From the NCBI GenBank assembly GCA_001179505.1, contig CDMY01000973.1, positions 62,001 to 126,000 on the forward strand: a DNA stretch of 64,000 nt. Direction: 5' to 3'. Shown piece after piece: positions 659 through 62,577 of the stretch; within the stretch, counting starts at the first letter, position 1, and the number at the start of each line of letters is the position of its first letter. The notes under the pieces were generated by a model, which saw nothing but the letters and a program-made list of their open reading frames with translations, was not told the DNA's origin and ran no database searches. The stretch is from Vitrella brassicaformis CCMP3155 (lineage: Eukaryota; Protista; Chromerida). The position numbers and the translations under genes were made by a program.

Positions 659-1092
659 ATCGATCAAGCTACGGTCAAACTAGACGTTCTGAAATACTCA
701 TCTCTGTGTCTGTCTCATCAGCTGATGAATGGAGGCATTGTCGCCTCCCTCGGCACACCGACAGCATCACCCGCACCCCCTCTTTATAAACAGCACGAAC
801 CGACACAACAGGCAAAAAGCGCTAAACAACACACACACAGAGACACCATCGGAGTACACTACCCCGACCCACTCCCACGGCACCCTACTAATCGCTCACC
901 GTACCAGACACCCGCACAATAAAAAGGCCCACAGGAATGAGGGTGCCATTGACACAACAAGGCACCAGCAATGAGTGCGATAAATCCGTCCATCCATGCG
1001 ATCAGAAGCCAGCCAAGGAAAAAGAGGAGTCTACAGCCACCCCACCCCAGCAGCCAGTCAGCTGCTGTGCACCCTCCCTCCCCTCCTCCCCC

Positions 1093-4079
1093 TCACCAGA
1101 CCTGGCACTCCTCCCCTCTTGCCTGTCGATTGACCACCGAGTCCGCCGGGCAGTCGAAGGCATCAGAAAACTCCACCAGGTTGGACACCGGACCCAGCGA
1201 GCGGAAGCGACCTGGCGAGTGCACGGCAGTGCCCAGCCGACTGATGACACACGCACAATACAACACACACCATCACAACACCTGCCAGCGGCCAGGTAGG
1301 TGCTCACCTTTTGGCGACCTTCGGTCGGACGATTTCGCACCAGTTCTGTCCCCAGGCCACCCAGAAGAGCTGCTCGACTGTGAGGTCTGACCCGTCGAGT
1401 GGGCGTGTTTGCAGGTCCTCCTCTGAGAGCGTCTTCCGGAGGGCCCTGCGGGCCAGCTTGACGCCGCCTGCAGAGGAAAAGGGAGGGACAGACGCGAGCT
1501 ATGCACCAAATGAATGCAATCACGGCATGGCAGGTTGACGCACCCACCCAGGTCAGCAACATTCTCGCCCAAGGTGAGCCGGCCGTTCATTTTGATGTCC
1601 TCCGTCTCCCCTGGGAGGTCTTCGGGGGTGAGGACGACGTATTCCGAGAACTGGTCGGCCACACACGTGGTGGCGGCCTCGAACTTGGTCTTGCTCTGGT
1701 CGCTCCACCAGTTGCGCAGCTTGGCGTCTGCGTCGTACTGCGCCCCTTGGTCGTCGAACCCATGTGTCAGCTGCAAGGCGCACACACACACACAGGGAAG
1801 CGAGCACATTCATGCCGGGATGGATGGATGGATGGATGGATGTGCGCGCTTGACCTCGTGGCCCATCACACCGCCAAGGCCGCCATAGTTCAATGCCTGC
1901 GACACACAAACAGAGATGCTCATCATATGCACACCCACACCCACACACATGCACAGCAGACCTTACCTTCTTTGCGAGGACTTCGTTCCGTGGGTCGTCT
2001 GGGTTGAACGAGTGGAAGTTTGGCTTCTGGAGGATGCCGGCCAGGAAGACCATTTCGTTGTAGTAGGGGCTGTAATAGGCATTTTGCTCGATGGGCGTGA
2101 CGTCCCACACCTCACGGTCGACAGCACGGCCGTAGAACGATGCCAAGTAGTTGAGCTGGCCGACAGACAACACGCACACGCAGACACACATGCCGTCCGT
2201 CGACACAGAAGTGCGTGTGTGCGTGCGTGTTGGGTGGACGGCTGACCCCTCTTCTGGCGAGGTAGAAGGAGGCGTTGAAGAGCTGTCCGTCGAGCTCCCT
2301 GGCGGCGTCCTCGGGGCCGTACAGCTTGGTGAGCTTTGTCTTGTAGTCGTCGGACAGCACCCACTCGGGATACGCAATCTTGTCCGTCATCTTCTCTAAC
2401 TTCTCGTACGCCACAGACCTACATGAACACACACACAGACGAACGGCCTGTCATTCGCTCTCTCTCTGTCTCTCTCTCTGTTGCTGTTGTTGTGTTGGCT
2501 CCCTGACTTGGTGGTGTCGCTCATCCAGGTGCTCTCATCCAGTGTGTCGTTGAAGGCGGCCTTGATGTTTGCGAGCATCTCCTCCGCCACAGCCTTGGCC
2601 TGTGGGTCGAAGTCAGTCAATATGGTCCGCGTCACCACCTGAGTGAACCACCCACGCAACAGACAGACAGATAGCAATTGCATGCGCGGCTCCCTGGCTG
2701 GCTAGCCTCTCCGCCCACCCACGCACGCACTCTCTCTCTCTCTCTCTCTCACCCAGTCCATGACAGCTCTCGATCCCGACTGACATTCGTCCCACCGCTG
2801 CTTGGGCTCCACGCCGTACACGTCACGACGAAAGGTGTACCATAGGTCAGCCCACTCACGCGTCAGGTAAGCACCCGCTCTGCACGCAAAGAGAGAGAGG
2901 ACATCATTTGACGGCCTTCTTCGTCTGTGTGCGAGCGTGTTGTGTTGGTGTCTTGGTCTTACGCGTTGAAGAGCTGTGACTGGAAGTAGGAAAGCAGCGC
3001 TTTGTCATCCCATTTCTCGGTGAGCAGCGTGTTCAGCTTGCGGAAGTAGTCCCGGTTGTGGATGACGATCTCGGTGTCATTCGTTATGGGGATCCCGTTC
3101 AGGTCGATCTCAGACTCTACACACAGCACGTGACACATCCATCCATCCAGCGGCCAATCAACATGCCCGTCTCGCCTCTTATTCATGCGTACCATAGACC
3201 TCAAAGAACCGGTCCCAGTCAAAATTCGGTGCCAGCTGCTTCATCTCTCCCAGGGTGACCGGCAGGGTGGTCTTGACCACATCGCGCTGCTCCTCCGGGC
3301 TCAGGAAGATGCCCTGCAGGTCCTTCTCGATGGCCAAAGACGCCTCGGCGCTCTCTGCAGGCGAGAGGCGGCCGGATGAGACGCCCCGCAGCGATGGTGA
3401 GGGTAGGGCGTCCTGGAACAGCTGCTGCGCGCCATTGAGGAAGGCCACGTAAGCTTCGGTGGTCTTGTTCTCGTTGTACTGTGTTTGAACCAACAGACGA
3501 AGAGCACGAACAGACGCATCATCATTCTGGTGCGTTTCCTTATCTGCCTTTCTCCCCTGTCCTGCGCACCTGAGTGTAGTCGAGGTTCAAGCCGCTCTGC
3601 AGGAGAGAAAAGGGGCGAGCAGTGTTTGTGTGTGTCCGGCCGGGATGGATGGAGGGGGAGTTGTCTGTCTGTCTCGTTAATTCACCTGGTACAGCTGTAT
3701 GACTGTGGTGTTCTCCGGCGTGATCGGATTCTGCTCAAAACTCAGACTGAGGAGCGACCGGATGCCGTTGGCCTGCAACTTGCCCAGCATCTCAGCAGCC
3801 ACTGAGCCCCGCTCTAATGTAACAGAAACGCACAGAAAGACAGACAACCATACACCCCATCGATAGGCACTTCGTGAGCAGACGGGGTCGGTGGGTACGG
3901 GTCGGTCACGTACGTACCTTTGGGCGTCATGTCGTCCCACCCCTCGATGGACGGCTGCAGCACGAAGGGCAGCGAATCCTGCAGAAAGTCGATCATCGGC
4001 TTGGTCCCCAGCTCGTCCTGCCGGTCACGATTCATGCACGCCTGCCCAGCCAAACATGCCACACCACACCCATCGTCTC

Positions 4080-4112
<33 letters not shown>

Positions 4113-4809
4113 ACTTGGAAGTAGCAGAAGAGGAGTGCCTCCCATCCGTCCTTTGGGGCTCTGGTGCGGTTCTCCTGGTCGGGCAGCGCCTCACAGATGC
4201 CGCTCTCCAACACTTCGAGAATCATGTACCTGTAAGGTGCAACACACACACACACACAGGCACAGGCAGGCACGTCAGATCGGCAGATCGGCAGATCTGG
4301 TTGCTCGCGCCACTTGACTCATTCACCATTCACCTCGTGTCGTTGTAGAGGTTATCGAACGACTTGGTCCAGCTGCCCTCTTCTGCGGGCAGCTCAAAGC
4401 TCTCCTTCCACGAACCACACGCAAAGGAGTCAGGGTCCTGAAGTGACGCAGCACTCACACAGAGAACGGCGCCCTCTGTGCCCGCCCGTTCGCGATCCTC
4501 ATCCATCTCTTCTCACGTAGCATGGGTCTGCAGAGAGGTCCATAGAGCTGAGGACGCCCTCTGTGAGGGGTGACAGCGGGGAGCCATTGACCTCTTCTGC
4601 CTCGCCATTGGTCGGGGGATCTCCTGACGTGACCTGCTAACCTCACACCACACACGGAAGCAGGCACACACCACACACATCCACCGATGGATGGATGAAT
4701 GCACACAGGCCGGCCGGCATCATGTTTCCGGGGATCTCTTCACCTGTGAGATTCCACGCTGCAAGATGACGCCGGCAAGCAAACACAAAAAGAGCTCACG
4801 AACAGCCAT
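1093..4809 (-). CDS. Secreted peptidase family M13 (neprilysin/endothelin-converting-enzyme-like) zinc metallopeptidase, multi-exon
   Basis: Spliced exons give signal peptide MAVRELFLCLLAGVILQRGISQ, MDLSADPC..SFACGSW, NAYYSPYYNEMVFLAGILQ, GGLGGVMGHE|LTHGFDDQG (HExxH split by an intron), ENVADLGG, LFWVAWGQNWC, HSPGRFR and terminal CQVW* (stop at 1093-1095). Confidence 0.93.
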
Positions 4810-52965: not shown

Positions 52966-54278
52966 CGTGTGTTTGATGCAGGACATCAGTCTCAAGATAG
53001 CGAAGGGATCTCGTGTGTTGGTGGTGGGCGGCAATGGCGCTGGCAAATCGACCGTTAGTCGGCTTGGCTTGTGTTGAAGGAAATGCATCATGTTCATGTC
53101 ACGTCGGCTGTGTGTTTCCCTTCCCTCCCTATTGCTGTCCGTCTCTCTACAGCTGCTGAGCATCCTTGGAGGAAGAAAGGTACGCAAAGCAATCACGAGC
53201 TGGATTGGATGCATGTGATGTGATGGAGAACATCTGCTGCTATTGACCGACAGATGGTTCCGGAAAGGAGTGCTCTCGTGCTGGGTCGGCCTGCCTTCCA
53301 CGACTCAACGCTCAGCAACGACGTCATGTACCTCGGCGAATGGTGGAAGAACGGTCAGGGCAGTCAGTCAGCCATAGGCAAACAAAGGCCTGCTCACGAT
53401 ATCTCATTCTTGACATGTACTGTGTTGTGCTGTCTGTCCTGTTGGTTCAGAGTTCTTCATGGATGTGCCGATGCGCGACTGTGTGCGGGAGCATCTGGAT
53501 GACCCCCGCTTCCAGGTGCTGCGTCGGTGTCTGGATGTGGACCTCGACTGGCGCATCTCGCGCGTGTCCGACGGACAGAGGCGGAGATGCCAGCTGCTCG
53601 CACACCTCGCCACGTACGTCACGCCCGTAGCCATCGAATCGATGGACCGACTGTTGTTGTGTGTGTGATGGGTGGGGTGGGTGTGTTGTGGTGCGCATGG
53701 CATGGTGTGTGCAGGCGGAGGAAGGTGTACATAATGGACGAGGTGACGACCGATCTCGATGTGGTCGGGAGGGACTCGCTCATGAGGTAGGTGGGCTGGT
53801 GTGGCATATGAATCCGATGCGATACACACCGTATGTAAGTAATGACGTGTGTGTGTGTGTGTGTGTGTGTTTGTATGTCAGGATGTTGCGTCTTGAGAGC
53901 GAGCGTCGTGGCGTGACCATTCTGTACGCCACGCACATCTTCGATAACATGGAGGGCTGGCCCACACACATACTTTACCTCAGAAAGGGGCAGATCCACA
54001 CCTTCTGCAAAATGGAAGACTTCACACAGTAAGTAAAAGCATGAGAGCGACACCACACAAGGCAGGTGGACAGGCCAACATGCGTTGACTGACTGTGCCG
54101 TGTGTGTCGTGCCTTGTGTGTGAGTGGCAGGTATCACAGACTGCGCGCAGAGGGCTGTCTGATGCCCCTGTATACCGTAGTGCGTGAATGGCTCTATGAG
54201 GAGCTTCACGAGGGAAACAGCGGCAGAGATCTGACGCTGACAGACGATGAGCTCCTCGGCGGGTCTACGAGTGGCTGA
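52719..54278 (+). CDS. CAF16: Soluble single-domain ABC ATPase, CAF16 / plant ABCI19-21-like; multi-exon
   Basis: GSRVLVVGGNGAGKSTLLSILGG (Walker A), YLGEWW, LDVDLDWRISRVSDGQRRRCQL (SDGQ signature), IMDEVTTDLDVVGR, TILYATHIFD; no TM domain; stop at 54276-54278. Confidence 0.85.
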
Positions 54279-54889
54279 GATGATTGATATGAGTGAGGCT
54301 CTGACGGCTGTACAGTTGTTCTGGTCAGCTGTTTCTTGGTGCACTTGGATCTGTCCATGACATGCGCCTGCCTGCATGTGAGCGCAGCCTGCTTGTCGGC
54401 TGCATGCCAGTACTATAACCATTGCAACAATGAGGAAGATTCGTGTCGAAAAGACCTGCAAGGGGTACCCTTCTTGTCCCCCATGCCCCCAGCTGGTTCT
54501 GTCGATCGGCTGGAGAAAGGCGCAGATCTGGCCTGACTGATCTGGCCTGTCAAGCCTTCCAGCCTCCTCTCCGACGAGCGCGCCTTCGCGCCTTCTGGGA
54601 GCGAGCAGCCTCGACTTTGTTCTCCTCTCCGCTGCCTCGAGCTGATCTGTAGAGCCGGCCCTGGACAACGGACATGCCCAATGCCTGTCAGTCTGGTCGC
54701 GAGCTGGCTGTGAAGGACGCCAGTGAGTGGGAGTGGAGCGAGGGGCGGGGCGAGGCGCGGCCACATAGTGCATGCCATTAAGGTAGGGCAGGGAGGAAAT
54801 GGCAGCACAGTAAGACACAGCGTGAAGTCACCGCGTCGGGTGTGTGTGTCTGCATGTGCATGCGTGCAGGTAGCTCTTTGGCGGCTGAG

Positions 54890-57800
54890 ATGAAGGCTGA
54901 CGGTCGTCCCTCTGCATCATCATCGTCATCCCTCAGTGGCGTCGGGTCGGTGGTCGAGCAACTCGCAGAACTACTCAGAGAGAAGTCGCATCACAACAGC
55001 AGGTCTGTCCGTGGGCATGCACGCGCACGTGTGCATGCACCTCCTCTCTCCTTGTCTGTACCGTGTGTGTGTGTGTGCGTGTGTCTGTGTGTGTGTCTGT
55101 GTGTGGTCAGTGACCCCCCTCCCCCGCCCCCTCCCCCCTCCCTCGTAGTAGCCAACACGTCTACACCGGCGCACAACCACACTCACCCCTACCCATCCGC
55201 ATTTAACGTGTACGCACCGCCGCCACCGCCACCTGACGATGACCACCATGGCATCATCACGATGGGCAACAGAATCGTCAGACGCACGTACGAACGAATG
55301 GTCGCCCCACACCCACACCCACACCCCCACACATGTGTACCTATCTGTTGTGTGCTGTGCGCTGTCGTGTTCAGCGGCAGCAAGGTGTATGTGCCCAAGG
55401 GCCACCGCCAGCACCACCAGCATCACCATCACCATCAGCTCCATCCGTCACCGTCACCCCCACCCCCGCCCACACGCACCAACACACAGTACTACCAGCC
55501 CATGACGACACAGAGAACCGGAAGTAGCGGTCTTGGTGGTGGTGGTGGTGGTGGTGGGTGCAGCGCCAGCAGCAGCACCAGCAGCAAAGAAGCGCCGCCC
55601 TACTCGACGGCCATGAAGATGAGATATGCTGAGGTCTCACGGGCACTACAGGTGCGCCGTCCGTGCCAAGAAGGAAGGCCTTTACATGGAAAATGGATGC
55701 GCACATGTGTGTGTGTGTGTGTGGGGGGGGGTGTGTGCAGATGCTGCTCAAGGAGGTGGGGAAGGCCATATCGGTCGCGAGCCTGGAGCAGATGTTCATA
55801 CAACGATTCGACGTCACGTAAGCGACCTGAGCGAGCAGATGAAAGGTCATTGTCAACCTATAACTATGCCTTTCGTGTGTCCTTCCTGTCCGTGTGTGCA
55901 GTGTGGATCAGCTGGTGCGCATCCCGCTGCTCGAGTACCTACAGCGCAAGGCGAGCATCTTCATGCTCGAGATGGAGGCCGACCCCCCAATGGTGGCCCT
56001 CCACCCCAGCATCATGCAGGGACCCCCACTGGCGGACCTCAACGCGCCTAAGGTACGTTGCATTTCCTTCGTGTGCAAGTGCGTGTTGATGGTGTGTGGT
56101 GTGATGGGCGTGTGTGGCTGTAGGATGAGGCGTTTGTGGTAGAGGAGTTCGTCAAGCTCATCGACGACTCGGTGACGCACGGGAGTTTCATCTGCTACAT
56201 CTCCTCTCTCTGCGGCAAGTTCATCCAGCGCAACTCGCTCTCCGTCACAAGTACGGCAGCGACCCTGCACACACCACCACACACACCCCTGATGGACGGA
56301 TGGATGGATGGATGGATGGCTGTGTGCAGGCATCATTGGTGTCCGCCCGCTGGATCTGCTCAAGCGACACCCCGAGACCTTCCTGCTCGTCGGAGGGGGG
56401 TCAGTCAGCACACGCAGCACAGCACAGGGACAAGCGTCCATCCAAGTATGTGTGTGGATGTGTGTCAGGAACGTGACGCTGCGCAAGTACGAGTGCGAGA
56501 GGGAGGTGCAGGAGGTCATCAGTGCCGTCCGCGGCGCGTCCAAGGCTCAGAGAGTCGCCAAGGCCGTCGATGAAGCACAGTAGCCCAGCCAGCCACAAGA
56601 CACACACCAGGCCCTCCTCATATATAACGTCACTCTCCCTCCGTAGGTATCCCCCATTCAGCACTCGCCGCGAACACCGTCCAGATCGGCTGACGGTGCA
56701 GCACGTCGTTGACGAGTTCCGCCGTCTCATTCTACAGGACTGCGCAGAGGGCGTGCAAGTGGTCGGCCGGCCTTTCACCATTCACTCACACGCCACAATA
56801 AATTGTGTTCATGTTCATCTTGATCTTCATGTTTTTTTTGTGTGTGTGTGTGTGTGTGTTTTGTGTGTGTGTGTGTGGTCGTCCTGTGCAGGTTTACATC
56901 TCGTCGCTATGCGGTCGGTTTCTTCAGCGCTATGGCGTGCCGGTGACCAAGATCATCCAGTGCCGACCAGCAGACTTCCTCCGACAATACGACCACATAT
57001 TCGTCATGACCGGTGCATTCTCTCCCCTCCCACACACACATATCATCGCTCCTCCTTGTGTGTGCAGGGGGCGGCAATGTGGGTCTGCGTGAGGTCCTGG
57101 GCCACGACATTTCCTCGGTCCCCCCTCCCCCGCCACGCACCGGCATCATCGACACACCCGCAGCAACATCCAAGCAGCACGCCAGCACCACGCAGGGCGT
57201 CTACAGCCACGGTGACGACTACAGCTACATTGACGAGGGGTATGGTGGGTCAGGGGAGGCATCGGAGGAGCGTGAGATCGCCGCTTTGGAGCGGATCCAC
57301 CAGTGGTGCACCGAGCAAGCAGAGAAGGAGGAGCATTTCCACACGGTGAGGGAGGGAGGGATGTTGACACTCATACGGTTCCAATATCCTCGCTCTCTCT
57401 CGCTCTGTGTGTGTGTGTGTGTGTGTTTGTGTGTGTGCAGGGCGTCTCACCCCCACCACCCCCACCACCCCCGCCCCCACCCTCCACGGACAGTGATGGC
57501 CTCGGTGTGCAGTCCTTCACACCCGACGTGATGCGGCTGCAGCAGCCAGAGCAGCCACAGACGGCACAACAGACAGAGGGCGGGTGCAGTGATGGCGATG
57601 TCTTGACGGACGCTTCGTTGACGGAGCTGCATGACCGGCTGGTCAACGACAAATATACACACATGTATGGGAGGGAGAAAGAAGCAGAGGGAGGGCGAAA
57701 AGCGTCACATGCTCTGTCTGTCTGTCTGTCTCTCTCTGTCTCTCTGTCTCTCTGTCAGTGCTGCCCGAGCGGTGCGTGTGGTGTGCGAGGTGCTCAAGCG

Positions 57801-60582
57801 GCAAACCGCCCTCCCAGTGGCCGACATACTCCTCGGTGACACACCCACACATCCGCCCACACATTCGCCCACCCATCCATGCTCCCTCTCTCTCTCTCAT
57901 CTGTGCCTGCAGGTGGCTCGGTTGCCTGTGGCGTGACCTCGCTCGAGGCTACGGACGTCTCCCTGGTCCTCTGCGTCGACACCCTCTCCCGGCACAATCC
58001 CGGGGCGTGGCTCTCGCCCTCACTCGACACGATCAGGTCGGTCCTGGAGTTGGGCCTCCCGGCCCACCCACCGCACCACCTCATCCCCAGAGAATTCGAC
58101 ACACACTACTCCAAGGGCGCTGTGACGTTCGGTGCGCACACACGACAGACGAGAGGTGTTTATGATATGTGTGAAGGGGGTCTGACAATTGTGTGTGTGT
58201 GTGTGTGGTGTGGTGTGGGGTCAGTGCTGCATCCGATGCCGCTGGCGTTGGGGAGGGGCGATGTGGCTGTGGGCGAGCTGCAGGCGATTGCTGGCGGACG
58301 GGGGATGACGTTCAGGTGAGGAGAGAGGGGGAGGGAAAGCCACATGTATGTATGTGTGGCGGTGTGTTGGTGTGTGGCGGGGTCAGTGTGAGCGTGGTGC
58401 CCATGTTTCACGGCCTGGAGGATGTCTGGAGCTGTCTCGACGCCACACCGCCGTCGCTGCGCTTCTGCATCGAACACGCGCTCACCAGGGAGACCACCGA
58501 ACTCATTCTCAAACAGACACCAAAGGTAATGAACATATCGACAGAGAGAGATAGAGAGAGAGATACCTGCCGTCTTCATGGACTCGTGTATGTGCGTTGC
58601 CGTATTGTCTGTCGTCCGTCCGTCAGGTGAAAGCCGCGATGCGTCTGATGGAGTTCTGGCGGCTGCACCAGGCGTGGAGCTCCCCCCGCACCACCCCCTC
58701 CCCCTACACCACAGCCCTGCTCACCCTACACGCAGCCCACCTGCACCTCCTCGACACCCAGCCCCACGAGTCACCCCTCGCTCAGCAGCACACCACCAAC
58801 AGCAACGGCAGCAGCAACAGCAACAGCGTCGCCCACCTCGCCCCGCCCGGCTGTGGGCCGTGGGAGATGGTGAAGCGGACTTTTGGCGTGATGGAGGGGT
58901 TTGAGACGGTGCGCGTGGTGTGGGCGGATGTGGGATTGGCGGCTTACACGGTGAGGGAGGGAGGGAGGGATGGCGCGTTGGGGTGGGAATGTGTGTATGG
59001 TGGTGTGTGGTTTGGTGTGGTTAGTACCCGAGCATATGGCCGGCACTGATGGGTCATGAGCGCATCCTGATGGACCCCGTCAACCCCTACAAGAACCTAG
59101 CTGGTCCGTCCGTCAGCCGAAATGACACACACCACACGCCCCTCCATCGCTGCGGCCCACTCCATCTCTGTGTGGTGTGCAGATCCGTCAGTGTTTGACT
59201 GCACCGAGTTGGTAGCCTTCGCCCAGCCTTCACGGTGGATGGACTTCTTCCGCCGTCACGTCACTCTGACACTCCAGAAGAAACGGGGAGGAGCAGCGGC
59301 ACCCACACTGCCGGTAGGCGAAAGACACTCAGACAGACAGACAGACAGGCGGCTTCAGCCACACAGACACCATTCTCCCCCTCTCTCTCTCTGTGTCTGC
59401 ACAGGTGTCTTCTCTCACCGGTCTCAGTCTCATTCGCACCCACACGGCCACGACAGTCACGACGCAGCAGCAGCAGCAGCATGACGACTACTCGCCATCC
59501 TCATTTGTCATCCCCAAGCAGCAGAGTGACCCCACCCCGCACAACTCGGACTGCACCACCACCACACACGCGTCATCGGCAGCCACGGCAGCCGCATCTG
59601 GACAGCGTCAGGTGTCCTTCTTTGCCAACTTCATGGGGGAAGACACCATGACGGGCAGCAGTGAGGTCACACCGATGTCTGGCTTGCAGGTGAGATAGAT
59701 GAAGAGGAGAGCAAAAGGCAAGGCGGTCTGTGTGGGACGTCCATGTGCGTGTGTGTTGTGTGTGTTTGGTTGTGTCAGGGTGCGTGTTGTTCGTCTGGGT
59801 TCTACTTCCCCGATGCGTCACCGGTGGCCAATCGTGGCAGTGGCACGACGACCGACGTCTTCTCCACCACTCTCCCCTTCCCCAAGGACACCTACCCATC
59901 AGCCGACAGCACCCACGCCCCCACTCCAGCCATCGACCTTAACACCGCAGAGATCGACCAGTGGACGCCCCCCTCACCCAGACCACTGCTACCATCCCTC
60001 GGCGGCCGATCCGTCCCACTCGACGAGACTGCCGGGGGCAGCGGCAAGGCACCCGGCAGCACCAGCAGCAGCGTGACCTTCCCCATATTCGCCGAGCGCA
60101 TGTCGCCATTCGACGTGTCGTCACTCTCCCCATTGGAGAGGCGAGATGCCGGCGCGGCCGACAACAGTGCGCCATTCTCCCTGCCGGCGGCAGCAGCATC
60201 AGCAGCAGCGAGGGACGGCTCACACATGCTGGCAGGGTGTGGGTGGGGCGGCAGTGGGCTGTTCGGCATTCCGCTTGGTGCTGGTGGTGGTGGTGATGGT
60301 GAGGATGGTGAGGCGGACATCAAGAACGACGAGACCTTCTGCCCGCCCCCGAGCTTCAACCTCAAGCTGACACTGGGAGAGGAGGACGACATCGATGAGA
60401 CGAACGAGGCGAATGAGACGACGGCAGCACCCACCACGGCAGCAGCAGCAGCAGCAGCAGCACCGACGGCCACAAACGGGGAGAAGGACAAGAGGAAGGG
60501 CAGGGGGCATGGCAAGGGGAAAGGGGTGTCGTGGGCCATGCTGGTGCGCATGGGGGCGCTCGACCCGAAGCACCACAAGTGA
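54890..60582 (+). CDS. Multidomain protein: Pro/His-rich N-terminus, 3 LOTUS/OST-HTH-like repeats, OAS-like nucleotidyltransferase fold with degenerate catalytic triad, disordered tail; about 20 exons
   Basis: Repeats ISVASLEQMFIQRF..LLEYLQR, YISSLCGKFIQR..GVRPLDLLKRHPETF and YISSLCGRFLQRY..CRPADFLRQYDHIF; NTase LLGGSVACGVTSLEATDVSLVL; FSVSVVPMF; KVKAAMRLMEFW; SPYTTALLTL; ILMDPVNPYKNL; ends DPKHHK*. True start may lie upstream. Confidence 0.75.
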
Positions 60583-62577
60583 GTGACCAGGGTGAATGGG
60601 TGGGGGGGTGGTCCTTCTGCCTTAGTTAGTCGAGTCATCATCTCTATCATGCCTAGATAAATCAACACCAGTTCCTGACGGGCGGGGCGGGTCGGCTATG
60701 GGGTGGGTGGTGTTCGTGGATGGGCACAGTATACCCATCGGACTGAATGACATGGAGAGGTCATGCACCTCAGTCTTAGTAGCTACGTATCCGATGCTTT
60801 CTACAGAGCAGATATAGCGAGGGAGGGAAAAGAGTGGAACTAGCTTCCTCCACACCAGCCATTCAGTGCCAGTGTCTAGCTTTGCCTTCCTACATGCATG
60901 CCTTCATGCAATGTCACTGCCCTTGTACAGACGTGGTTTGTTTTGTCTCCTTTACGAGAGAGAGGTCTGTTGACGCATTGACGAAGGGCGGGACGCGTCA
61001 AGCGTGGCGTTGTTGGAATGGAATGTCAGAACGAACGAGAGAGAGAGAGAGAGAGGGAGGGAGGGAGGGAAAGCGGCTTTCCCCTCTATACGGCGCAGGA
61101 TGCGTGTGTGTGTGCAGAAAGACGCCTTGCCTTCGTGGTGTAGTAGTGCCAAGATGTGGTGTGGTGTGGTGTGGTGGCATGTGTAGCAAGCAACCTTATT
61201 CGGGCAGCCCATTTTCCTCCTCAAGAAGAGCTCATGCAGCTCATTCTGGGCGGGCTCTGGAAGGAGGAATGCAACGGCAGTGGTGGTTCCATACCTTATA
61301 CAGTATACAGGGGAACTAACTGGGTGTGTAGATATGTACGCGTCATTGGACGCATGGCATGGACGGAGCAGACAGACAGACAGACACTCTGAGTGTCTCG
61401 TTGTCGCGTCGCGCCTCTGTATGGGTGTATCTGCCCATGTGTACATACGCACGAAGGGACAACGGAGCGTTGGATTGGTATTGGTGTTGGTGTCGGTGTT
61501 GATGCCAGTGCGCACGGGGATTGACACCGCTGGGCTGTATTTGTTTGATGTCGGGATCCTGGCGGTTGATGTCGTCTCTGACATGTCAGGAGAGGCCATC
61601 AAGCGTCGTGATCGCGAAGATGCAAACAGACCAGTGGTGGCATCCCCGCGCGTACGCACCATGTCTGGTGCCACGTGTGATGTGTGTATCCGTACCATGT
61701 TTGTTTTCACTGGTGGAGCGCTGAGTTGGTGTTGATGGGCATGTCCACAAGTGGCTGACTGACACCGCACCGTCACGTTTGATTTCACACGTCAAGACAG
61801 AGCAGTGGTGCCATACAGACAGACAGATAATCTTGAAAGCGATGTTTGGTGCCACGTATGTATGTTTTTCCTCTGTGTTTTCCCCGCCGCCGTTTTCCCT
61901 TCCGAGGCGTTTTCGGCACCAACGAGCACCAACCCAATCAGCTGTCGATAACTCTGCTACTCCATACTGCCTGGTGCACTCATTGCGCGTGCATGTATGT
62001 GTGTGTTGGTTGGTAGCGCACCAGCAGCAGCCATTCCTCCCTCTTCCCTTCCTGCCATAGCTGTGTGTGTGTCTATGTGTGTCTCGTCCTGTGTGCTCCT
62101 CTGGCCGTGAGTGTTTTAACTGTCTGCCATCTCTCCACACGTACCCACCTACTCTAATGATACGCTCATGGACGAAGAAAATGATGGATGCCGCTGCGGG
62201 CCGCCAAGGCCATATGAATGCTGCCTGTCTGTCTGTCTGTCTGTCTTGGCTGGCCCAGTGCAGTGCGATTCATGCAATGCTCACTGCCCTTGTGCAGCCA
62301 GCCACAGAGTTGTGTGTCCGCCTTTGTGTGTGTGGATCGGCGCGACGAACCTGAGACACACACAGCAGCCCATCCCACATACACAGATGATCGTAACGAA
62401 AGCAGCGTGTGGTGACCCTCGTCACTGCAGATTCACAAAATCCCTGCGTGGTTGATCTGGCCGTCCTCAGTCGACGAGGGCACGTCACAGTGTAGCCCCT
62501 TAACACCGCGAGCTTTTTGGAAACCCTGCGAGCCAGCCCGGAGAGAGGAAAGAGGAAAAAAGCCCGCGCGTAAAGGG

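What the first reader, a model, noticed from the sequence alone, without database searches (positions are those of the whole stretch)
54890..60582. LOTUS x3 fused to an OAS-like nucleotidyltransferase: candidate dsRNA-sensing or RNA-granule system in an alveolate
Seen in sequence: after splicing, the C-terminal half carries a collinear series of motifs resembling the OAS fold, compared with human OAS1 from memory. LLGGSVACG..TDVSLVL ~ VKGGSSGKG..SDADLVV; SVSVVPMF ~ EFDVLPAF; KQTPKVKAAMRLMEFW ~ KQRPTKLKSLIRLVKHW; PSPYTTALLTLHA ~ PPQYALELLTVYA; WEMVKRTFGVMEGFETVRVVW ~ AQGFRTVLELVINYQQLCIYW; ILMDPVNPYKNL ~ ILDPADPTGNL. Upstream are three ~55-aa repeats with a LOTUS/OST-HTH-like pattern. Established: OAS/cGAS/CD-NTase enzymes are nucleic-acid-triggered immune sensors, and LOTUS domains bind RNA or DEAD-box helicases in germ-granule and piRNA proteins. 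Inference: this fusion could be an RNA-surveillance, antiviral or granule-scaffold system. I do not recall it being described, but could not search.
Basis: partly seen in the sequence, partly recalled or inferred. Interest (0 to 1): 0.85.

Follow-up and report, generated by a model that had tools for sequence, protein, structure and literature searches.

The report
Triple LOTUS plus inactive OAS protein
This is a real, spliced gene of the alga-like protist Vitrella brassicaformis whose protein joins three LOTUS-type RNA-binding winged helices to an OAS-fold domain that has lost its catalytic residues, so it is probably an RNA-binding scaffold and not a 2'-5'-oligoadenylate-making virus sensor.

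Summary
Window 54674-60582 (+) is one 22-exon gene. Its translation equals CEM38193.1 / A0A0G4H3A2, an "unnamed protein product" of Vitrella brassicaformis, 1352 aa. Spliced transcript contigs support it.

- **Distribution:** the same architecture occurs in about 85 protein clusters from dinoflagellates, Alphamonas and Digyalum, so the fusion is old.
- **Lost chemistry:** none of 67 members keeps the three catalytic carboxylates. Vitrella has D-x-S and S where OAS1 has D75-x-D77 and D148. The K66, K213 and Q229 equivalents are also lost.

A non-catalytic RNA-binding or RNP scaffold is the best reading; this is inferred, not shown. The scan noted the same architecture on two other pieces of this genome (s1-248672, s1-194554), probably a paralogue. 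I found no paper that describes the fusion.

The parts
54674..60582 (+). Whole coding region, 22 exons, 1352 aa (CEM38193.1). Exons: 54674-54722, 54870-55002, 55111-55287, 55375-55651, 55741-55817, 55902-56052, 56124-56250, 56330-56399, 56469-56579, 56647-56761, 56892-57012, 57068-57345, 57441-57664, 57759-57835, 57913-58131, 58225-58315, 58387-58525, 58627-58950, 59025-59103, 59183-59313, 59405-59689, 59779-60582 (stop included).
   Evidence: The translation is identical to P0001. All 21 introns are GT-AG, 55-147 nt. Exon lengths fit the spliced contigs.
54674..55624 (+). N-terminal low-complexity region (aa 1-203: Ser, Pro, His and Gly runs)
   Evidence: No Pfam match. Absent from the shorter orthologues of 700-790 aa.
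55625..56016 (+). Repeat R1, LOTUS-like winged helix (aa 204-276), the most divergent copy
56127..56481 (+). Repeat R2, LOTUS-like / Egalitarian-type winged helix (aa 290-358), with motif YISSLCGKFIQR at strand 1 and helix 2
   Evidence: Pfam WH_Egal best stretch is aa 314-360, 25.6 bits. R2-R3 z 28.7. Motif residues are invariant or nearly so in 72 sequences.
56696..57099 (+). Repeat R3, LOTUS-like / Egalitarian-type winged helix (aa 408-480), motif YISSLCGRFLQR, ending GGGNVGLREVL
   Evidence: 60% identical to the single repeat of the Alphamonas homologue. In orthologues this copy passes the Pfam WH_Egal threshold, 29.5-38.7 bits against 27.
57100..57608 (+). Low-complexity linker (aa 481-618, includes a poly-proline run)
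   Evidence: Sequence reading. It holds the only stretch, 57476-57499, that no listed transcript contig bridges.
57609..59286 (+). OAS-fold pseudo-nucleotidyltransferase domain (aa 619-981)
57835..57932 (+). G-loop GGSVACG (aa 663-669; the first codon is split by an intron). It is the equivalent of OAS1 G61-G67 'GGSSGKG'. The Lys66 equivalent is Cys here.
   Evidence: Alignment columns. OAS1 numbering comes from the 4ig8 alignment.
57954..57962 (+). D677-V-S679, the equivalent of the OAS1 catalytic pair D75-A-D77. The second carboxylate is lost.
58314..58393 (+). S766-V-S768 in the strand 'TFSVSVVPMF' (the S766 codon is split by an intron), the equivalent of OAS1 'EFDVLPAF'. There is no acidic residue at either candidate position for D148.
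58627..58950 (+). Exon encoding the OAS1_C-type helices (KAAMRLMEFW...PSPYTTALLTLHA...VRVVW), with a 31-aa low-complexity insert (aa 859-889, window 58765-58857)
   Evidence: phmmer of this exon alone recovered P0001 (1.3e-66) and the Alphamonas homologue (1.7e-08). The insert has low pLDDT.
59058..59199 (+). Motif ERILMDPVNPYKNLADPSVFD (aa 932-952), the equivalent of OAS1 'PVILDPADPTGNLGG'
   Evidence: D937 and P938 are invariant; N940, P941, N944, D947, F951 and D952 are nearly invariant. Aligned to OAS1/OAS2.
59287..60579 (+). C-terminal low-complexity tail (aa 982-1352)
   Evidence: No Pfam match. Absent from orthologues.
60583..60700 (+). Start of the 3' untranslated region. Transcript contig X8 record 25 runs 366 nt beyond 60700.
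   Evidence: table 8.

Best explanation
The gene encodes a non-catalytic RNA-binding or RNP-scaffold protein of an old family in Myzozoa (dinoflagellates plus relatives of apicomplexans). Three LOTUS-type winged helices, closest by sequence to the 'Egl domains' of Egalitarian, are followed by an OAS-fold domain that is a pseudoenzyme.

Shown here:
- the gene structure and its transcription;
- the two folds;
- the family and its spread;
- the loss of the metal-binding and nucleotide-binding residues in every member examined.

Inferred:
- the winged helices bind structured RNA or dock a DEAD-box helicase, as LOTUS and Egl domains do;
- the dead OAS-fold domain serves as a second RNA-binding or protein-docking surface. 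Known parallels are OASL, OAS3 domain I, the NF45/NF90 DZF domains, and the inactive exonuclease-like domain that completes Egalitarian's RNA pocket;
- the very strong conservation of the repeats points to a fixed cellular partner, not an arms race with viruses.
For: - **Gene and transcript:**
- **OAS by sequence:** the family profile hits only OAS chains, E 1.5e-31 to 1.8e-12. The Alphamonas homologue hits OAS1_C at 46.4 bits against a cutoff of 19.9 and is 31% identical to this protein over 410 aa, E 6e-56.
- **Pseudoenzyme:** 0 of 67 members have three acidic residues at the triad. The S63 equivalent is Ala in 59 of 67 and the K213 equivalent is Thr in 39 of 67.
- **Conservation:** the repeat region is 49-59% identical between Vitrella and dinoflagellates, against 24-34% for the OAS domain.
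- **Precedent:** Egalitarian has three LOTUS-like domains plus an inactive exonuclease-like domain that together clamp dsRNA stem-loops (PMC13186709).
Against: - No RNA-binding or partner data exist.
- The Vitrella protein on its own fails the Pfam thresholds for both domains: WH_Egal 19.9-25.6 bits against 27, OAS1_C 11 bits against 19.9. Its OAS domain alone finds nothing in the PDB by phmmer. Membership therefore rests on homology to the family and on the predicted fold.
- Repeat profiles find no LOTUS or Egalitarian chain in the PDB by sequence. Pfam OST-HTH is only weakly matched: 11 of 72 members, best E 0.0053.
- The OAS1 dsRNA-contact residues K60, R195 and K199 (their role is recalled from memory) align to L, T and L here. 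OAS1-style dsRNA docking is therefore not supported.
- A conserved Glu at the D77 position in 58 of 67 members could mean some residual chemistry in the family, though not in this protein.
Confidence: 0.6

Rival explanations
1. A non-catalytic antiviral sensor or adaptor in the manner of vertebrate OASL. The dead OAS-fold domain and the winged helices would detect viral dsRNA or structured RNA and pass the signal on through protein contacts, not through 2-5A.
Confidence: 0.2
2. A protein-protein adaptor with no direct RNA binding. The OAS-fold domain would act as a dimerisation module like the DZF domains of NF45/NF90. The LOTUS-like domains would only dock a DEAD-box helicase, as extended LOTUS domains dock Vasa.
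Against: DZF scores well below OAS, and no Pfam DZF match was seen. By sequence the repeats are nearest to the Egl domains, which contact the RNA minor groove through helix 2. Helix 2 is also where the family's invariant motif sits.
Confidence: 0.15
3. An active, nucleic-acid-triggered nucleotidyltransferase (2-5A or another signal) with an unusual active site.
For: The two-lobed OAS fold is complete and confidently modelled. The first Asp (D677) and the Gly-Gly-Ser of the G-loop are kept in this protein.
Against: The D77 and D148 equivalents are Ser. The K66, K213 and Q229 equivalents are Cys, Glu and Pro. No family member has a full triad.
Confidence: 0.05

Closest known systems
2'-5'-oligoadenylate synthetase family: OAS1, the inactive domains of OAS2/OAS3, and the OAS-like domain of OASL (Pfam OAS1_C, PF10421)
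   Different: The catalytic triad and the nucleotide-binding residues are lost family-wide. The OAS1 dsRNA-contact residues are not kept. The domain is fused N-terminally to three winged helices. There are no ubiquitin-like domains as in OASL. The Vitrella copy has low-complexity inserts and tails.
Egalitarian (Drosophila mRNA-localisation adaptor): three N-terminal LOTUS-like 'Egl domains' plus an inactive 3'-5' exonuclease-homology domain (Pfam WH_Egal, PF23713; PMC13186709)
   Different: The C-terminal module is an OAS fold, not an exonuclease fold. No BicD- or dynein-light-chain-binding parts are evident. Repeat profiles do not reach Drosophila Egl by sequence in the PDB. Homology of the whole three-domain array is a lead, not a result.
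LOTUS / OST-HTH domains of Tejas, TDRD5, TDRD7, Oskar and MARF1 (Pfam PF12872)
   Different: The sequence match to PF12872 is weak and below threshold (best E 0.0053). The partners differ, with no Tudor or NYN domains. There are no data on Vasa or G-quadruplex binding.
Alveolate OAS-like proteins in the published OAS-superfamily survey (Culbertson and Levin 2023, PMC10732462)
   Same: Orthologues of this family are in that data set with an OAS1_C hit. Examples are Amphidinium massartii P038593, which is P0055 here, and a second Vitrella protein, EP00390_P012849.
   Different: In what I read, that study lists them only as OAS1_C proteins. The searched main text does not mention the winged-helix repeats, the fusion or the loss of the catalytic residues. 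The Vitrella entries I found there name only P012849, not this gene.

Membership tests
OAS family (2'-5'-oligoadenylate synthetases) | Sequence signature of the OAS1_C domain (Pfam PF10421 at its gathering score) in this protein itself | tested here: not met
   P0001 scores 11 bits, E 0.31, against a cutoff of 19.9. phmmer of aa 610-990 against the PDB finds nothing.
OAS family (2'-5'-oligoadenylate synthetases) | OAS1_C signature in the protein family to which this protein clearly belongs | tested here: met
   Orthologues score 26.6-46.4 bits. P0001 against P0002 gives E 6e-56 and against P0025 gives 4.5e-124. The family profile with P0001 as first row finds OAS2 at 1.5e-31, OAS1 at 1.3e-20, OASL at 9.6e-16 and OAS3 at 1.8e-12.
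OAS family (2'-5'-oligoadenylate synthetases) | Two-lobed OAS fold, closer to OAS than to other nucleotidyltransferases | tested here: met
OAS family (2'-5'-oligoadenylate synthetases) | Catalytic triad of three carboxylates (human OAS1 D75, D77, D148) | tested here: not met
   The residues here are D677, S679 and S766/S768. None of 67 family members has three acidic residues.
OAS family (2'-5'-oligoadenylate synthetases) | Nucleotide-binding residues (OAS1 S63, K66, K213, Q229; their roles are recalled from memory, their numbering is checked against the 4ig8 alignment) | tested here: not met
   The residues here are S665, C668, E821 and P838. The family majority is A, K, T and D.
OAS family (2'-5'-oligoadenylate synthetases) | dsRNA-activated synthesis of 2'-5' oligoadenylates | not testable with these tools
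   This needs an enzyme assay.
OASL-type protein | Inactive OAS-like domain followed by two ubiquitin-like domains | tested here: not met
   The inactive OAS-like domain is present. No ubiquitin family hit is found in P0001. Ubiquitin-OAS1_C fusions exist in other dinoflagellate proteins, with ubiquitin at the N-terminus.
LOTUS / OST-HTH domain | Winged helix-turn-helix fold with the LOTUS-type extra helix; LOTUS domains as nearest solved structures | tested here: met
LOTUS / OST-HTH domain | Sequence match to Pfam PF12872 | tested here: inconclusive
   11 of 72 family members match at E up to 1, best 0.0053, all under the gathering score. The nearest named Atlas clusters carry OST-HTH or WHD_Egal, but at a score of only 0.83.
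LOTUS / OST-HTH domain | Binding of a DEAD-box helicase (extended LOTUS) or of G-rich RNA (minimal LOTUS) | not testable with these tools
   This needs binding assays.
Egalitarian winged-helix domain (Pfam WH_Egal, PF23713) | Sequence match at the gathering score | tested here: inconclusive
   P0001 scores 19.9 bits as a whole and 25.6 bits for aa 195-485, against a cutoff of 27. Orthologues score 29.5-44.7 bits, and 71 of 72 members match.
Egalitarian winged-helix domain (Pfam WH_Egal, PF23713) | dsRNA minor-groove contact through helix 2; BicD binding by the first domain | not testable with these tools
   Only a positional parallel can be drawn. The family's invariant motif YISSLCG[KR]F[IL]QR covers strand 1 and helix 2, and helix 2 is the RNA-contacting element in Egl.
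DZF domain (NF45/NF90) | DZF sequence signature and best structural match | tested here: not met

The most novel reading that the evidence does not exclude
The three winged helices and the dead OAS-fold domain together form a composite clamp for bent or double-stranded RNA elements, built on the same plan as Egalitarian (three LOTUS-like domains plus a dead enzyme fold). On this reading a 'triple LOTUS-like array plus pseudoenzyme' RNA-selection module is ancient in eukaryotes. In dinoflagellates and their relatives, whose gene control is (from general knowledge, not tested here) held to be largely post-transcriptional, it would select mRNAs for localisation, storage or surveillance.
Probability: 0.2. 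Interest if true: 0.75.

Novelty: new variant of a known kind. Interest (0 to 1): 0.5.

Why it matters
OAS proteins are a textbook antiviral enzyme family, now thought to date back to early eukaryotes.

This finding defines a widespread, unnamed branch in dinoflagellates and relatives of apicomplexans. In that branch the OAS fold lost its chemistry and was joined to three LOTUS/Egalitarian-type RNA-binding winged helices.

- It gives a testable candidate for an RNA-binding or RNP-scaffold factor in organisms whose RNA biology is poorly understood.
- It warns against reading 'OAS-like' hits in protists as evidence of 2-5A immunity.
- It offers a second natural example, beside Egalitarian, of a triple LOTUS-like array paired with a dead enzyme fold.

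It does not open a long-standing question by itself, and the function is still inferred.

Tried and rejected
- **First gene model, wrong in two places.** The 20-exon model started at 54890. It missed exon 55111-55287 and mis-split the exons at 56330-56579. The database protein, the depth arithmetic and the repeat homology (GGGNVTLRK against GGGNVGLRE) corrected it.
- **Brute-force exon enumeration.** It was too ambiguous or too slow.
- **Exon-by-exon Pfam searches.** They found nothing meaningful.
- **Repeat profiles against PDB sequences.** Neither the three-repeat profile nor the single-unit profile found a LOTUS or Egalitarian chain.
- **phmmer of the Vitrella OAS-like domain alone against the PDB.** It found nothing.
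- **Word-indexed search with the OAS-domain profile.** It returned only two proteins, so I could not place the family among stand-alone protist OAS proteins.
- **Search for long relatives with aa 195-990.** It found no Chromera, perkinsid or core apicomplexan orthologue. Given the candidate limits, this is not evidence of absence.
- **Look-up of the scan's notes by sequence.** It was blank.
- **Two separate genes.** Rejected.
- **Second Vitrella paralogue (EP00390_P012849).** I could not fetch it with the tools, so I did not compare the two copies.


Full report
**Gene model and transcription**

The region is GC-rich eukaryotic DNA with short introns full of GT/CA runs. I laid contigs of four public runs on window 54800-60700.

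Contigs of X8, X1 and X2 skip introns at GT-AG borders, so they derive from RNA.
- X8 record 23 (1476 nt) covers 55174-57475.
- X8 record 24 covers 57500-57664.
- X8 record 25 (2661 nt) covers 57637 to 366 nt beyond 60700.

My first hand-built model was open and fitted the contig lengths, but it was wrong in two places. A phmmer search with the clean 108-aa exon 58627-58950 against 1.84 billion representatives returned the annotated protein P0001 (E 1.3e-66). P0001 is 1352 aa, CEM38193.1 / A0A0G4H3A2, an 'unnamed protein product' of Vitrella brassicaformis CCMP3155.

A 22-exon model from 54674 to 60582 reproduces that protein exactly, and all introns are GT-AG. Three points support the annotated version where it differs from mine:
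- The extra exon 55111-55287 is confirmed by arithmetic. Contig depth 8.19 x 110/197 = 4.57, the reported depth of bin 55194-55390.
- The annotated split at 56399/56469 gives the same total length as my first split.
- It restores 'GGGNVTLRK', which parallels 'GGGNVGLRE' of repeat 3 and the family consensus.

The only stretch not bridged by a listed contig is 57476-57499. It is a poly-proline run inside one exon. Complete single transcripts from other species carry both halves.

**The three repeats**

R1 (aa 204-276), R2 (290-358) and R3 (408-480) are real repeats. Alignment z-scores against shuffles are 28.7 for R2-R3 and 7.3-7.6 for R1 against the others.

With an alignment of 72 homologous regions, AlphaFold gives a confident model (pLDDT 87.6). 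Each repeat is helix, short strand, helix, short helix, helix and beta-hairpin.

An exhaustive structural comparison with 48,161 chains gives these scores:

|---|---|---|
| Tejas LOTUS | 10.1 | rmsd 2.5, 73 of 75 residues |
| TDRD5 LOTUS | 9.5 | |
| TDRD7 LOTUS | 9.5 | |
| Egalitarian, two domains | 8.4 | 147 residues, 19% identity |
| MARF1 LOTUS | 8.3 | |
| Oskar LOTUS | 7.8 | |

By sequence the repeats match Pfam WH_Egal in 71 of 72 members (best E 3.5e-11). They match OST-HTH only weakly: 11 members, best E 0.0053. Orthologues pass the WH_Egal threshold at 29.5-44.7 bits against 27. The Vitrella protein falls just short at 25.6 bits.

The 2026 structure paper on Egl-BicD says that Egl's three N-terminal domains 'closely resemble the LOTUS domain'. 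It shows ED1 and ED2 inserting helix 2 into adjacent dsRNA minor grooves, while an inactive exonuclease-like domain completes the pocket (PMC13186709). In this family the invariant motif YISSLCG[KR]F[IL]QR covers strand 1 and helix 2. That is a positional parallel only.

Repeat profiles did not reach LOTUS or Egl chains by sequence in the PDB.

**The C-terminal domain**

On its own the Vitrella domain is too diverged for Pfam (OAS1_C 11 bits) or for phmmer against the PDB. It is, however, 31% identical over 410 residues (E 6e-56) to an Alphamonas edax protein. That protein hits OAS1_C at 46.4 bits and OAS2, OAS1 and OASL in the PDB.

A profile of 67 family domains, with the Vitrella sequence first, finds only OAS proteins in the PDB: OAS2 1.5e-31, OAS1 1.3e-20, OASL 9.6e-16 and OAS3 1.8e-12.

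|---|---|
| OAS3 domain I | 26.4 |
| OASL | 25.7 |
| OAS1 | 23.0-25.0 |
| OAS2 | 23.3 |
| CdnC | 19.8 |
| NF90/NF45 | 19.3 |
| Poly(A) polymerase | 18.8 |
| TUTases and cGAS | about 17 |

The nearest ESM Atlas clusters are chordate OAS1_C clusters with TM 0.69-0.70.

**Loss of the active site**

OAS1 numbering was read from the 4ig8 alignment. The equivalents here and in 67 family members are as follows:

| OAS1 residue | Vitrella | Family (67 members) |
|---|---|---|
| D75 | D677 | acidic in 12 |
| D77 | S679 | Glu in 58, Thr in 7 |
| D148 | S766 or S768 | acidic in 3 and 0 respectively; mostly Gln/His/Thr and Tyr/Phe |
| S63 | S665 | Ala in 59 |
| K66 | C668 | Lys in 64 |
| K213 | E821 | Thr in 39 |
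| Q229 | P838 | Asp in 40 |

No member has three acidic residues at the triad. This agrees with the separate first-stage note s1-212252.

OAS1 K60, R195 and K199 align to L, T and L in this protein. I recall these residues as dsRNA contacts. OAS1-style dsRNA docking is therefore not supported either.

**Family and distribution**

The architecture of three repeats plus an OAS-like domain, 700-800 aa, occurs in about 85 protein clusters. Named sources are:
- dinoflagellates: Symbiodinium species, Ceratium/Tripos, Pelagodinium, Amphidinium, Polykrikos, Biecheleria and Prorocentrum;
- the colpodellid Alphamonas edax;
- Digyalum oweni, which I recall as an apicomplexan-related 'squirmid' (its taxonomy was not checked here);
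- Vitrella.

The fusion therefore seems to predate the split of dinoflagellates and the apicomplexan lineage. I found no core apicomplexan, perkinsid or Chromera member, but the searches were capped, so absence is not shown.

The repeat region is far more conserved than the OAS-like domain: 49-59% against 24-34% identity between Vitrella and the others. The Vitrella copy is the longest and most degenerate member, with long low-complexity tails.

**What is already known**

Culbertson and Levin (2023, PMC10732462) showed that OAS-like proteins occur in 8 of 12 eukaryotic supergroups. Their supplementary domain table lists members of this family only as OAS1_C proteins. Examples are Amphidinium massartii P038593, which is P0055 here, and a second Vitrella protein, EP00390_P012849.

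In the text I searched they do not mention winged-helix repeats or the lost catalytic residues. A full-text search for OST-HTH together with oligoadenylate synthetase gave one unrelated paper. A search for OAS, LOTUS domain and dinoflagellate gave nothing relevant.

The scan itself noted the same architecture on two other pieces of this genome, s1-248672 and s1-194554. This is probably the paralogue named above. I could not fetch it, so I did not test this.

**Reading**

Settled: a transcribed gene; three LOTUS-type winged helices; an OAS-fold domain; a conserved family; and loss of the catalytic machinery.

Inferred: the protein acts without catalysis, as an RNA-binding or RNP-scaffold factor. 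The strong conservation of the repeats suggests a fixed cellular partner, either a structured RNA or a helicase.

Rivals: an OASL-like non-catalytic immune role and a purely protein-docking role remain open. An active enzyme is unlikely.

**Classification**

I file this as a new variant of a known kind. Both domain types are known, and the OAS-like half of the family is already in a published data set. The fusion and its pseudoenzyme nature appear undescribed.

Noticed in passing
window 53527-54032 (+): ORF pieces just upstream of the gene read like the Walker B and following region of an ABC-type ATPase ('KVYIMDEVTTDLDVVGRD', 'ILYATHIFDNMEGWPTHILYLRKG'). They probably belong to a separate upstream gene. 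Pfam scans of the two raw ORF pieces gave nothing.
   Followed up: partly
window 58950-59470 (introns after exons 58627-58950, 59025-59103 and 59183-59313): Depth rises to 1000-4800 in all four runs. Dozens of contigs break at 58953/58970 and 59330/59348 with unrelated loose ends. The (GGGA)n and (CAGA)n-like intron runs here are repeated across the genome and attract false 'joints'; these are not splice events.
   Followed up: partly
window 58132-58224: This 93-nt intron has no stop codon in frame, so retaining it would insert 31 residues into the N-lobe of the OAS-like domain without truncating the protein. X2 record 9 shows it spliced out.
   Followed up: no
P0091 (443 aa, Logan) and the dinoflagellate entries in supplement 26 of PMC10732462: Dinoflagellates also encode proteins with one or two N-terminal ubiquitin domains followed by an OAS1_C domain (Hematodinium, Gymnodinium, Azadinium, Crypthecodinium, Alexandrium). 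This recalls vertebrate OASL with the domain order reversed. P0091 also lacks the catalytic triad in alignment A1.
   Followed up: partly
another piece of the same genome (notes s1-248672 and s1-194554); EP00390_Vitrella_brassicaformis_P012849: Vitrella seems to have a second family member with OAS1_C hits at aa 661-715 and 818-860. In the published alignment its D77-equivalent position reads Leu ('ADALIVLM'). I could not fetch its sequence with the tools.
   Followed up: partly
P0067 (Digyalum oweni, 805 aa): Its best WH_Egal match lies at residues 7-72, upstream of the usual three repeats. This suggests a fourth winged-helix copy in this lineage.
   Followed up: no
P0092 (Prorocentrum cordatum, 1138 aa): An annotated protein joins kinase and EF-hand domains to an OAS1_C domain, and it matches this family at 60% identity over 20% of the query. 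It may be a merged gene model and not a true fusion.
   Followed up: no
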